Both the position numbers and the translations under genes were made by a program. The notes below the pieces were generated by a model, which saw nothing but the letters and a program-made list of their open reading frames with translations, had not been told where the DNA came from and ran no database searches. Positions 27,270 through 31,920 of a stretch of DNA of 40,066 bases are shown here, piece after piece. Source of the stretch: Guillardia theta CCMP2712 (Eukaryota; Protista; Cryptophyta); the NCBI RefSeq assembly GCF_000315625.1, contig NW_005434572.1:133430-173495 (forward strand), given 5' to 3'. How positions within the stretch are numbered: position 1 is the stretch's first letter; every line of letters begins with the position of its first letter.

Positions 27270-28125
27270 CATGGTGGACCGCCGCTGGCTTGGACTCCGG
27301 GAGTGAGCCACCGTCCGACCCTACGGTACGGTCGCGCGTCACCACCACACGGTGGCACTCAGGGCGGCGTCACACGCGGCCCGGCCCGGTAGCCGCGCGG
27401 GCCGCGCCGGGCCGCGCCCCAGGGTTCGCGGCCGGCGTAGCCTCGGAGCGACCGTCGCCTAGCCTAGTAGGCCGGCCGGCCCGGGCGGGCGCCGCCGCGG
27501 TTCCGAGGGCCGACGCCGCACTGCACTGCGGCAGCCTGAGCCTGTGTTCCGTGGCAACTCGGCGCGGCCGGTTGAGAGTCTCCGAATTCGGCATAGCCTG
27601 TGTACGCTGGGTAGTATCGACCCCCGGGCCCCGCGGCCGAGTCAACTGGCGGTCCGAGCCGTGACTCGTGACCGTTGAACCGGCGAGGCCACGGTTTGAC
27701 CGTCCGTGACTCACTGACAGCCGGGCCCCCGGGCCCGGACTCAAGTTGTTACCGTACCGTAGTACTTCCCCGCATTGAACTTAAGTTTCAACGAGTAAAA
27801 CATCCAACTTCACGGCCTGAGTCATGAGAACGGGCTCGTACTGTCATTTTTAACTTAACGGAAGTTTGATCGCCGGAGTCCCGACACCGCCGCCGCCGTA
27901 AACTGAACCGGATGATACCGCCTCAGTGGCAGTGACACTGCCAGGACTCCGGGTCATCACGCCGCCGGGTTTTATAGGCCCTCGGCCCGGTAAGCCTTCG
28001 GCACAGACTCCGGGAATCCGATCCGAGCGGCGGAAGGGCCCGGGCCCGGGCCGCGGGCCGCTCAGCTAAGTTGTTCGTCCGGGAGTCCCGAGTCCCCGGC
28101 ACACGGCAAGAGTCGGTGGCAGCGA
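27270..28125. other. CpG/CCGG/GAGTC-rich palindromic island in a head-to-head intergenic region
   Basis: About 24 CCGG and 13 GAGTC/GACTC sites by manual count, with several short perfect inverted repeats. An AT-rich tract follows at 28200-28420. Confidence 0.7.
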
Positions 28126-28652
28126 AGATTCTAATGGGTTGCTTTTTTCTGTCCTCCTGAAATTTTGTAGAGAATAGTGAGGCGGGCTTGTTCTGTTCTC
28201 CCCAGGGGAGTTCAAATATAAAATAGTTTTAAACCGTCTACGACTTCAAGTTGCTCGTACCATTTTATGACCACCTTCATAATATTGACTCCTCCCATCC
28301 TACAGAAGTTGTACCACAAGTTACTATATTATTATTTAAATTTGTATCTGGTTTTAGAATTTGCCACAGTATCGTACAGATTGGGTGAAATATGTAAGGT
28401 TTTAAAAAATTGTTTTAGCTGTCGAATCCCAGCATGGCGGGTAGCGGGCAGGCGGGCGGGAGCGCGAAGAGGAGGGAGAAGGGAGAGTGAGAGTGAGAGG
28501 ATGAAGGGGAGAGGACAGATTTGAGAGACAGGAATCTTGTATCGTGTGCATCGAGGAGGAAGGAAGTAGAGGAAGCGAGCGATTGAGGGTCGGTGAGTGG
28601 TCCTCCACAAAAGTGAGCAATCTCGAGCCCGGGCCCCAGCTCGCTGGTTATC

Positions 28653-31600
28653 ATGCTGGTCGAACCTTTGCACCTCAATCTCGATCTAGTTGATCCATCT
28701 GTATCGAAACAATCGGTTATCAAGATCATCACCCTCGTGAATTCCGGAACTGCGAATGCGGCATTCAAGATTCGGACCACGGCCCGTGAGAGGTAGCTGC
28801 GGGCATGCGAGAAGTCTTTCGCTCCTTGTCTGCTGCTCTCCACATGTCCCCTTTTCATTGTCTTCATTCGATTGGACATCCATGACACCCGCTCCCTCGT
28901 TGTCTGCATGCTTGCGATCTCTAACTTCCGTCACTCGAACCTGAGCCTGGTTTCTTCCTCTGCAGGTACTCCACAACCCCCAACAGCGGACTGTTGGGGC
29001 CTGGTCAAGAATGCGATATCATTGTCACGATGCTCCCCCTCTCGCAGGAGCAGTACATTGATTTCTCTTCCACAATGTCGTGCACGGACAAGTTCTTGGT
29101 CAGAAGCTGCTTCACCGATGAGTCAGTCACGGAGGACAACGTACGAGGGGAGACGGCGGCGTCATGGTGGAACTCTCGCCCCAAGTCAGAGCTCACAGAT
29201 CAAGTCATCACATGCAGTTACATCAGACAAGCCACTCGGGTGGAAGTTGGGCAATCCAAGTTGAGGTTCCAGAAGGAACGATCCCCACACAAGATGGTGG
29301 GGACGTCGCGAGTTCTTGCCGAGGAGGTTGGTCCGAGCACATGCCTCGCCCTATTCCTCGCACGCTCATGTTTGATGTGACATGGGATGATGTAGATACT
29401 GGTGCTGCTCAACAACACAAGGCAAAGACAGGCTTTCAAGATCCGCACAACGGCACGTGACCGATATCGGTGAGAGTTGGTGTAACCTGTCTCAGCGCTT
29501 ACAAGCTCACTCCAGCGTCGAGCCCTCATGCGGAATCGTTGAGAGCGGGCAAAAGTATTCAGTTCGCATCTCGATGGTTCAGGTTTGACCTGTTCGGGAT
29601 AGTTGTGACTCGCTCGTGACTTTCACCATTTCAGCCACGTGGGGTCACCAGTGACAAGTTCCAGGTGAAGAGGATTTGATCCTTGAAGGATCTGTTCTTG
29701 ACAAGATTGCAGGTCCGATGTGTAGTAGCAGACGCAGACACAGATGAAACTCAGATCAAGAGGTGTGTTGCGTCTAGTTGCTCACCCTCGCGACCTCGCA
29801 GTCTTTTCAGTGGTTGACCGATGCTGTAGGAACGAATGGTGGGCGGAGCCGACTATCAAGTCTAAGCTTTATGATACGACACTAGACAGGTAGCTAAGAC
29901 CGTTGTCGGTCCCATTCTTCTCGTCTTGCGATGATCGGCACAGTTTGACATGTTTACAGCATTTACATCTCCGATGCCGACGAAGAGAATGTACTCATTT
30001 GTCGTTAGAAGATTCCGTCTTCATATTGACATGTACCTTACAGATATCAGACAAGAACCGAGGAAATGGCTATCTGGACTTGAAGAAGACTGAACCTGCT
30101 ACGACTCTGGCCGTCTTGCCAACGGATTCGAGGTGAGCTTGTCCTGTCACTTCGATAGTTTCTGACGAGGTTCCAGCATCAACGCTGACGAGGGTTCATA
30201 CGATGCCCTTCTGAAGGTAACTTGCTCGAATCTCTTGGATCACCTCTTGACGCTGTTTGCAGATTGTGCTTGTGGGCGACTCGGATGTGGGAAAGACAAG
30301 CTTGTGAGACATGGCTGCCTCGGTTTGCTCGATCACTGTGCCTGATGCTCGGATTCAGGTTGACTCGATTCTCCGATGATAACTTTTCCAACTCCTTTAT
30401 CTCGACCATCGGTGTGGACTTTCGTTGGAGGACTGTAAGGACGGCCTGACGTCGAGGTGCCCTGCGCTCATCTGGACCGGCAGATGTCAATAAAGGACAA
30501 GAACATCAAGTTGCAGATTTGGGATACAGCTGGCCAAGTGAGAGAATATCACTCTGACAAGTTTGTTTCCATACTCATGAGAGATTCCAGGAGAGATTCA
30601 GAACGATCACAAGTGCATACTACCGCGGGGCTGGTCAGTAACGTTGATCTCTACTCTTTTTCTTCCACTGATGGACGCGCAGACGGGATTGTTGTCGTCT
30701 ACGACATCACCAACAAGTGTGCTGCCGCCTTTGACAGGGTTGAAACTGACGCTCGTTGGCTAGGGAATCTTTCGATCACGTGGACATGTGGATGAAGGAG
30801 ATCCACAAGTTCACAGACGATAACCACGTACCTTGACACCCCTTCTCCGCGTCCTACCTGACGTTTTCTCAGGTCCGGGTGCTCGTGGTTGGCAACAAGT
30901 GCGACATGGAAGAGAAGAGAGAAATCCCAACGTCTCTTGCTCGGGCAAGATGGGGAGGAGGAGAGGCTTCGCGGATGTGACAGGGGACACAGGAATATTG
31001 TAACCAACGAGGTATGAAGGTGGTCGAGACTTCTGCCAAGACTGCGACCCGGTTCGGGCAGCTGTTCCACTCTTGGAATGTCAGCGTGACATGTTTGTTG
31101 AAGAGTGAACACTGCTTTCATCGACATGGCGGAGGAAATTCTGGAAAATCGACAGAAAGTGAGGAGAGGACGTGCATGACAAATCTCTAAACCTCCTCTG
31201 GCAGTTTGCCGAGAACAAGCCCAAGGAGCTGGACTACAGTGGGGAAACAAGGTTCTTCTGTCCTCCTCCCCCTCCCCCTTCCCCCCTTTCCACCTCCCCC
31301 TTCGATCTGCTCCTCCTCGATCTGCTCCTCGATCTGTTTTTCCTACCACCTTGCCCTTTTCGCTCTCCCTCGTGCTATTTTCAGTATTATCGGTGACTGA
31401 GGTTACAGCTTGAATCAAGCGTCGCAGAGCTGTGAAGGAATCATGCAAAGTTGCTTTGCCTTCATCAAGTCAGTTTCCTTCACTTCTCTTCAATCCTTCC
31501 CTCTCCACGTCTTGTCGCCTCTCTTCTTCGCTTGGCTTCACCTTTCCCTATCCTCACTATCTCACGTCGTCCCTTCGCTTCTCTGCTCTCCTCCCTCCCC

Positions 31601-31735
31601 GCTCCTTATAACTCTATTTCTACTCCTTCCTCTCTATCTACTCCTTCCTTGACCTTTACCTGTGCATCTCTCATGGATGGTTCTCCCAGGGGAAAGGCAG
31701 GTTTCGGTCACACAAGCTACGGCAAACAGATTTGA
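28653..31735 (+). CDS. Tandem MSP (VAP-like) domains fused to a Rab1/Rab8-like small GTPase
   Basis: In-phase splicing gives MSP1 (MLVEP...AAFKIRTTARERYSTTPNSGLLGPG...DKFLVR), MSP2 (QAFKIRTTARDRYRVEPSCGIV...DKFQVR), a linker, then YDALLKIVLVGDSDVGKTSLL.RF.DD.F...FISTIGVDF...[26 protein letters not shown]...GNKCD...ETSAK, ending GKQI*. The start could be slightly further upstream. Confidence 0.88.
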
Positions 31736-31920
31736 AAGAAAGAGGAGGGAGGACTGAAGAGGAACTTGAAATTTTCTGAGCTAGAAAGAGAAGATCTTGC
31801 TTGTTATCTTTTCTTTCTCTCCATCATCCTCTTCACTTGCCAGTACACAACGAAGACTATCACTTGTGCTGCTTCCAACAGGTTGAGGCCATGAAGACTC
31901 TAGATGCAGAATCAGTCCAG

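What the first reader, a model, noticed from the sequence alone, without database searches (positions are those of the whole stretch)
28653..31735. MSP-MSP-Rab fusion: a 'large Rab' carrying two VAP-type MSP domains
Seen in sequence: exons 28653-28792, 28966-29326, 29396-29469, 29516-29582, 29635-29664, 29713-29762, 29830-29889, 29960-29990, 30044-30132, 30177-30216 and 30263-30303 join via GT..AG introns with matching phases and no stop. There is no in-frame ATG between MSP2 and the Rab P-loop, and no intergenic space. Both MSP domains keep the VAP signature FK(I/V)(R/K)TTA..RY and DKF. The GTPase has all G1-G5 boxes and Rab1/Rab8-type RabF motifs (IGVDF, KLQIW, RFRTIT, YYRGA). Established: MSP domains of VAP/Scs2 bind FFAT motifs at membrane contact sites, and known large Rabs (Rab44/45/46) carry EF-hands and coiled coils rather than MSP. 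Inference: this could be a GTP-switched FFAT-binding tether linking lipid-transfer proteins to Rab-defined membranes. I do not know of this architecture being described, but could not search.
Basis: partly seen in the sequence, partly recalled or inferred. Interest (0 to 1): 0.88.

Follow-up and report, generated by a model that had tools for sequence, protein, structure and literature searches.

The report
Cryptophyte Rab1A with two MSP domains
This alga really makes one protein that joins two VAP-like docking domains to a Rab1A membrane-traffic switch lacking the usual lipid tail; the Guillardia protein appears to have been described in 2009, it is conserved across cryptophyte algae, and its job is still untested.

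Summary
The fusion is real: one 22-exon gene (28653-31735, 530 aa, Guillardia theta GUITHDRAFT_97443). Spliced contigs from three studies span it end to end, and full-length orthologues occur in Hanusia, Baffinella, Rhodomonas and a Teleaulax cluster. It is very probably not new. The GTPase belongs with the SAR Rab1A paralogue (tree 100/97). A G. theta Rab1A is already in the literature, and from memory Elias, Patron and Keeling 2009 reported it with two MSP domains and no prenylation motif (paper not held, so not read). VAP's K45/T46/T47/K87/F88 positions survive, but K118 and R55 are lost in both domains and M89 is Gln in MSP2. MSP2 is nonetheless the best-conserved part, which suggests an altered ligand. 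Additions from this work: every complete orthologue lacks terminal CC/CXC and carries an internal cysteine cluster on a short helix, probably S-acylated; plastid-less Goniomonas has the same Rab and cluster without MSP domains. Best reading: a non-prenylated, probably acylated Rab1A with a built-in peptide-binding adaptor. Function untested. No earlier scan note covers it.

The parts
28439..28652 (+). 5' UTR part of exon 1 (contigs start at 28439-28449); holds a 7-codon uORF at 28501
28653..28792 (+). Coding exon 1: start ATG, N-terminal half of MSP1 (FKIRTTA)
28966..29326 (+). Exon 2: rest of MSP1 (DKF, WW, last strand) and first strands of MSP2
29396..29889 (+). Exons 3-7 (29396-29469, 29516-29582, 29635-29664, 29713-29762, 29830-29889): core of MSP2, the most conserved part of the protein
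29960..30216 (+). Exons 8-10 (29960-29990, 30044-30132, 30177-30216): end of MSP2, disordered linker (about aa 267-307, pLDDT<50, 20% conserved) and start of the G domain
30263..31158 (+). Exons 11-19 (30263-30303, 30359-30434, 30484-30537, 30591-30633, 30683-30716, 30764-30827, 30873-30944, 30993-31051, 31104-31158): Rab1A-type G domain, G1 at aa 319, G3 with Q61-equivalent intact, G4 NKCD, G5 ETSAK
30945..30992 (+). Intron 17, a GC-AG intron
   Evidence: fits the record coordinates
31205..31468 (+). Exons 20-21 (31205-31251, 31409-31468): hypervariable tail and predicted helix aa 505-516 with Cys504 and Cys511, candidate S-acylation sites
31690..31735 (+). Last coding exon and stop codon; the protein ends without CC/CXC/CaaX
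31736..31863 (+). 3' UTR as far as the contigs reach

Best explanation
A single cryptophyte gene encodes a Rab1A-clade GTPase with two MSP domains in front. SHOWN: one spliced transcript; intact G boxes; Rab1A placement; no prenylation motif or TM helix; an internal cysteine cluster 20-40 residues from the end in all complete orthologues; altered FFAT pockets; separate canonical Rab1 (two) and VAP genes in the same genome. INFERRED: the protein is held on a membrane by S-acylation of those cysteines plus a short hydrophobic/basic helix. It would then not cycle through GDI as prenylated Rabs do. The G domain switches with GTP and binds Rab1A-type effectors on a secretory (Golgi or post-Golgi) membrane. 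The tandem MSP unit, on a flexible linker, is a built-in adaptor that binds a short peptide motif in partner proteins. MSP1 may still bind FFAT-like motifs weakly; MSP2 most likely binds a different motif. The net effect is VAP-like docking placed on a Rab-defined membrane rather than the ER.
For: Single transcript. Colinear MSP and Rab exons in one 14.4 kb gene in the Baffinella genome. Orthologues. Tree: Cryptista + SAR Rab1A 100/97; the SAR-type SA..D signature is in all cryptist members. Tail: Cys at -27/-20 here and at -19 to -40 in orthologues and Goniomonas, while 112 of 116 short Rab1A-type hits have Cys in the last five residues; helix 505-516 in the model. MSP2 core is 81% identical among five distant orthologues versus 58% for the G domain. 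Pocket definitions from PMC12582312. Canonical Rab1s at G000 C5 and C6 and a VAP with K45/R55/K118 and a hydrophobic C-terminal stretch at C155. Precedent for small GTPases swapping prenylation for acylation or added domains, including PX-Rheb in Cryptista: PMC5869587.
Against: No acylation, localisation, GTP-binding or ligand data. The hydrophobic moment of the tail helix is modest (0.3-0.4) and that region has pLDDT<50. Cysteine spacing differs between species (CxxC, CCxC, C-x6-C). The AlphaFold model (pTM 0.51, 16 sequences) says nothing about domain contacts. The ligand of MSP2 is unknown.
Confidence: 0.5

Rival explanations
1. One reading: both MSP domains are ordinary FFAT receptors, so the protein is a GTP-switched tether that brings FFAT lipid-transfer proteins to a Rab membrane.
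For: K43, K45 (as Arg), T46, T47, K87 and F88 equivalents are kept; the best solved relatives are Scs2, VAPA/B and MOSPD2; MSP1 has Leu at M89, as Scs2 does.
Against: K118 is Val/Ile in MSP1 and Thr in MSP2; R55 is Thr/Ser and Glu; M89 is Gln in MSP2; K87 is Met in Rhodomonas. R55A alone weakens Nir2 FFAT binding sixfold (PMC12582312). The genome has its own VAP with an intact pocket.
Confidence: 0.22
2. The MSP pair is a structural or oligomerising Ig-like module, as in nematode MSP dimers or ciliary ASH/Hydin/CFAP65 domains, that parks the Rab on a cytoskeletal, flagellar or ejectisome structure.
For: Secondary Pfam hits to Ig_CFAP65_4th, Cep192 and HYDIN and weak PDB hits to FAP47, CFAP65 and Hydin; the FFAT pockets are altered.
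Against: True VAP MSP domains get the same secondary hits. The strongest conservation lies on the FFAT-binding strands themselves, which fits peptide binding better.
Confidence: 0.15
3. The protein is not lipidated. It is a soluble Rab recruited only through MSP-partner binding, the MSP pair replacing the lipid anchor.
For: No prenylation motif or TM; weak amphipathicity of the tail.
Against: The cysteine cluster is kept in an otherwise 25%-conserved tail, and also in the Goniomonas protein that has no MSP domains. The tail is therefore an anchor candidate independent of MSP.
Confidence: 0.12
4. Annotation artefact: two neighbouring genes, or read-through.
For: Contigs alone cannot show transcript starts.
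Against: One spliced contig with all linker joints in three studies; no read pile-up after MSP2 in a 3'-skewed raw-read run; no Met for a separate Rab; same fusion in other genera and in a second genome.
Confidence: 0.01

Closest known systems
G. theta Rab1A-like protein of Elias, Patron & Keeling 2009 (J Eukaryot Microbiol 56:348; PMID 19602080)
   Same: Almost certainly this very protein: same species, the Rab1A-clade member of this genome found here, identical GenBank entry ABW35313.2. From memory the abstract names two N-terminal MSP domains and no C-terminal prenylation motif. The citation is confirmed but the text is not held.
   Different: Nothing in identity. Added here: RNA confirmation, orthologues across cryptophytes, the MSP-less Goniomonas orthologue, the tail cysteine cluster and the pocket substitutions. 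I could not check whether later papers already report these.
SAR Rab1A paralogue (Plasmodium/Toxoplasma Rab1A)
   Same: SA..D switch-II signature, best sequence hits, sister clade at 100/97
   Different: SAR proteins are about 205 aa with terminal CC; this one has two MSP domains, no terminal Cys, and RW rather than RF after GVDF
VAP/Scs2 and MOSPD2 MSP domains
   Same: MSP fold and FK.RTTA / DKF motifs
   Different: Two domains, no coiled coil or tail anchor, K118 and R55 lost, M89 to Gln in MSP2
Rab1K (Kelch-Rab1 of myzozoans; bioRxiv 10.1101/2022.12.12.520010) and PX-Rheb of Cryptista (PMC5869587)
   Same: Lineage-specific small GTPase with an added N-terminal binding domain
   Different: Different domains (Kelch propeller, PX) and different lineage or GTPase
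Large Rabs Rab44/Rab45/Rab46 (from own knowledge)
   Same: Rab domain at the C-terminus of a longer protein
   Different: No EF-hand or coiled-coil family hit here; the G domain is Rab1-type

Membership tests
Rab GTPases | G1-G5 boxes intact, catalytic Gln present | tested here: met
   Ras family E 2e-60
Rab GTPases | RabF1-F5 motifs | tested here: met
   IGVDF, KLQIW, RFRTIT, YYRGA, VYDIT; best PDB matches Rab1
Rab GTPases | C-terminal CC/CXC geranylgeranylation motif | tested here: not met
   Last Cys is 20 residues from the end; absent in all complete orthologues. An atypical, non-prenylated Rab.
Rab GTPases | GTP binding and hydrolysis | not testable with these tools
   inferred from motifs only
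Rab1A (SAR paralogue) | Groups with SAR Rab1A apart from pan-eukaryotic Rab1 | tested here: met
   100/97 with Rab8 root; same split 97/94 under the mixture model, though Rab11 rooted on the cryptist branch. The alternative (with Rab1) was not rejected, p-AU 0.085.
Rab1A (SAR paralogue) | Signature residues RF after GVDF and SA..D in switch II (derived from the hits here) | tested here: inconclusive
   SA..D met (NA..D in the Teleaulax cluster); RF replaced by RW, RV, KV or KM
VAP/Scs2 family | MSP domain | tested here: met
VAP/Scs2 family | FFAT pockets K45/T47/M89/K118 and V44/T46/V54/F88, plus R55 | tested here: not met
   K118 and R55 lost in both domains, M89 to Gln in MSP2, V54 to Thr in MSP1
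VAP/Scs2 family | C-terminal transmembrane anchor in the ER | tested here: not met
   highest 19-residue hydropathy about 1.1
Large Rabs Rab44/45/46 | N-terminal EF-hands and coiled coil | tested here: not met
   no EF-hand family; two MSP domains instead
Large Rabs Rab44/45/46 | G domain in the Rab44/45/46 clade | not tested
   not in the tree; nearest relatives are Rab1A and Rab1

The most novel reading that the evidence does not exclude
The Rab1A of the cryptist ancestor first swapped prenylation for acylation, as seen in plastid-less Goniomonas. It then gained the MSP pair in plastid-bearing cryptophytes, where it serves a cryptophyte-specific route (contact sites or traffic at the chloroplast ER or ejectisomes) through a new, non-FFAT peptide code read by MSP2.
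Probability: 0.12. Interest if true: 0.75.

Novelty: already known. Interest (0 to 1): 0.36.

Why it matters
It is a natural join of two core membrane systems, Rab switches and VAP-type docking, kept across cryptophyte algae and apparently never tested at the bench. The architecture itself was very probably reported in 2009, which caps the surprise. Two things remain worth testing. A near-invariant MSP2 surface with reversed charge could reveal a new peptide motif beyond FFAT. The Goniomonas orthologue gives a handle on the order of events and supports a Rab1A shared by SAR and Cryptista.

Tried and rejected
The 2009 paper could not be read by DOI or PubMed id, and PMC3383260 is not held. Ten full-text searches found no held paper naming the MSP-Rab architecture, so that part of the prior description rests on memory. 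Exons were joined only inside local scripts to check the frame, and later searches used the database's own record P0001, returned by the exon-2 search and identical to the model. The 79% identity shown for P0001 is an average over two matched stretches, not a different species. MSP+Rab outside cryptophytes: none among 8 N-terminal hits or the 120 best long Rab hits; this is not an exhaustive census. An FFAT-like motif in the acidic linker was rejected (no aromatic pair, not conserved). HMMER's alternative register that would make K253 the K118 equivalent was rejected: the model's last strand starts at 255, MSP1 and MSP2 align in the other register, and K253 is not conserved. The first tree with Rab11/Rab18 outgroups had long-branch warnings and was rebuilt without them. 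Whether Goniomonas never had or lost the MSP pair is unresolved (p-AU 0.47 for MSP-Rab monophyly). Pfam found nothing in seven long ORFs elsewhere in the window. Earlier scan notes were unrelated.

Full report
OBSERVATION. The window is from an 87.1 Mb, 669-contig genome, and the gene's product is named by NCBI as Guillardia theta CCMP2712 GUITHDRAFT_97443. I extended the model by 11 exons to the stop at 31733-31735: 22 exons and 530 aa, with one GC-AG intron at 30945-30992. Searches of the model went exon by exon by reference and the joined step was left out. The exon-2 search returned the database's own 530-aa record P0001, identical to the model, and I used that record afterwards.

ONE TRANSCRIPT. 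Contigs from three runs of three studies each give one spliced record (1752, 1941 and 1848 nt) that starts at 28439-28449. Two of them visibly reach the last exon. The tool reports 21 joints, the number of introns in my model, and the 15 it lists include every joint across MSP2, linker and P-loop. Exon positions in the X2 record equal those computed from the model. A raw-read run with a strongly 3'-skewed profile has depth up to 90 at 31737-31867 and 0 to 0.2 over 28593-30819, so nothing suggests a transcript ending after MSP2. That library's type is inferred from its profile, and only about 6% of the run was read. No Met lies between residue 212 and residue 354, so a separate Rab would lack its P-loop. 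A JGI transcript contig also encodes the full protein. In the Baffinella genome the MSP and Rab exons are colinear in one 14.4 kb gene. The artefact reading is dead.

DOMAINS AND DISTRIBUTION. Pfam gives two Motile_Sperm stretches and a Ras domain. AlphaFold gives two well-formed Ig-like domains (1-134, 135-265), a disordered linker (267-307), a G domain and a mostly disordered tail with one helix at 505-516 (mean pLDDT 72, pTM 0.51). The best solved relatives are Scs2, VAPA/B and MOSPD2 for the MSP domains, and Rab1 for the G domain. Full-length MSP-MSP-Rab proteins occur in Hanusia phi, Baffinella frigidus, Rhodomonas lens, a cluster holding Teleaulax amphioxeia and an unnamed MMETSP transcriptome, at about 50% identity outside Hanusia. 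No protein outside this set carried both families among the hits listed. The genome has only one copy. It also has two canonical Rab1 genes, a Rab8 and a conventional VAP, so the fusion is an extra, specialised paralogue.

WHICH RAB. The best short hits almost all carry RF after GVDF and SA..D in switch II, where canonical Rab1 has KI and SS..H. Named members of that set are Paulinella, Euglypha, foraminifera, Perkinsus, Eimeria and Prorocentrum, that is, the SAR Rab1A paralogue. With Rab8 as root, the cryptist proteins form a clade (100/99) sister to SAR Rab1A (100/97). A tree forcing them with Rab1 is 20.6 log units worse but not formally rejected (p-AU 0.085). An earlier tree with distant outgroups kept the same split but had long-branch warnings.

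PRIOR DESCRIPTION. Klinger et al. (bioRxiv 10.1101/2022.12.12.520010) write that Rab1A is present across SAR and in G. theta as previously reported, and recover it at 0.99/86/100. PMC2817417 and PMC4922565 cite Elias, Patron and Keeling 2009 (PMID 19602080) for the Rab1A paralogue. P0001 also carries the accession ABW35313.2, separate from the genome entries; by my own knowledge that series predates the 2012 genome. From memory, the 2009 abstract says the G. theta Rab1A-like protein lacks a C-terminal prenylation motif and has an N-terminal extension with two MSP domains. The paper is not held, so this last step is recalled, not read. I put it at about 0.9.

MEMBRANE ANCHOR. The protein has no terminal CC/CXC and no TM segment, whereas 112 of 116 short Rab1A-type hits have Cys in their last five residues. 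Every complete orthologue has two or three cysteines 11 to 40 residues from the end, followed by hydrophobic and basic residues, in a tail that is otherwise 25% conserved. Goniomonas pacifica, a plastid-less relative (own knowledge), has a 231-aa protein in the same clade with the same cysteine cluster and no MSP domains, and an in-frame stop lies upstream of its ATG. S-acylation is the simplest reading. It is inferred, with precedent in other small GTPases (PMC5869587). Goniomonas nests weakly among the MSP-Rabs (94/80) and MSP-Rab monophyly is not rejected (p-AU 0.47), so gain versus loss of the MSP pair is open.

FFAT POCKETS. In VAPB the pockets are K45/T47/M89/K118 and V44/T46/V54/F88, and R55 forms a salt bridge whose loss weakens Nir2 binding sixfold (PMC12582312). 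MSP1 keeps K43, Arg at 45, T46, T47, K87 and F88 and has Leu at 89 like Scs2, but has Thr at 54, Thr/Ser at 55 and Val/Ile at 118. MSP2 has Glu at 55, Gln at 89, Thr at 118 and mostly Asp at 120, and the first three are invariant. Yet the MSP2 core (172-200) is 81% identical among five distant orthologues, against 58% for the G domain. A surface so conserved but charge-reversed points to a specific partner other than a classical acidic FFAT. The K118 mapping rests on alignment and predicted strands, not on a structural superposition.

MECHANISM. Best reading (0.5): an acylated, non-prenylated Rab1A sits on a secretory membrane, switches with GTP, and carries on a flexible linker a two-domain adaptor that docks short motifs of partner proteins. 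MSP1 perhaps binds FFAT-like motifs weakly, and MSP2 a different motif. Rivals are a classical FFAT tether (0.22), a structural Ig-like module (0.15), a soluble unlipidated Rab (0.12) and an artefact (0.01). Whether GTP controls the MSP domains is untested; the long disordered linker gives no sign of it.

VERDICT. It works like a Rab1A with a VAP-like adaptor. It is an atypical Rab1A-clade member, not a VAP and not a Rab44/45/46-type large Rab. The architecture is very probably already known, though uncharacterised. The cross-species conservation, cysteine tail, Goniomonas orthologue and pocket changes make it testable. Interest 0.36.

Noticed in passing
window 31469-31689 (intron 21): A low-depth contig in run X1 (31440-31719, depth 4.8 against 158) retains intron 21. 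Read through, the frame runs to 31652 and ends in a hydrophobic stretch (19-residue hydropathy 1.9) that resembles a tail anchor. The intron is 80% pyrimidine and raw reads show no depth at 31475-31605, so this is probably pre-mRNA and chance.
   Followed up: partly
window 28434-28521: Two short upstream ORFs: ATG 28434 (18 codons, just before the contig starts) and ATG 28501 (7 codons, inside the 5' UTR).
   Followed up: no
window 30945-30992: GC-AG intron in the G domain, consistent with the contig coordinates.
   Followed up: yes
window about 30135-30165 (intron 9): Contigs in runs X1 and X2 match a short piece ending at 30165 and then run on unlike the window, so a similar short sequence is probably transcribed elsewhere.
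   Followed up: no
L038:53-748 (P0175): Goniomonas pacifica Rab1A-clade protein without MSP domains and without terminal cysteines, with an internal CCxC cluster; extends Rab1A to a plastid-less cryptist.
   Followed up: yes
P0126-P0128, P0130: Foraminiferal Rab1A proteins (Ammonia, Nonionella, Elphidium) are 340-412 aa with a 140-210 residue N-terminal extension that has no listed Pfam family, and they keep terminal cysteines: another lengthened Rab1A.
   Followed up: no
L002 (G000:C215:35176-35448) and L003 (G000:C101:211977-212165): Two further MSP-like matches in the genome, one inside a 1912-codon open frame.
   Followed up: no
P0116, P0117, P0146, P0151: Environmental Rab1-like proteins listed with kinase or EF-hand families; could be real fusions or chimeric gene calls.
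   Followed up: no
window 27500-28150: GC-rich stretch with palindromic CCCGGG-type words upstream of the gene; a DNA search found no other copy in the genome.
   Followed up: partly
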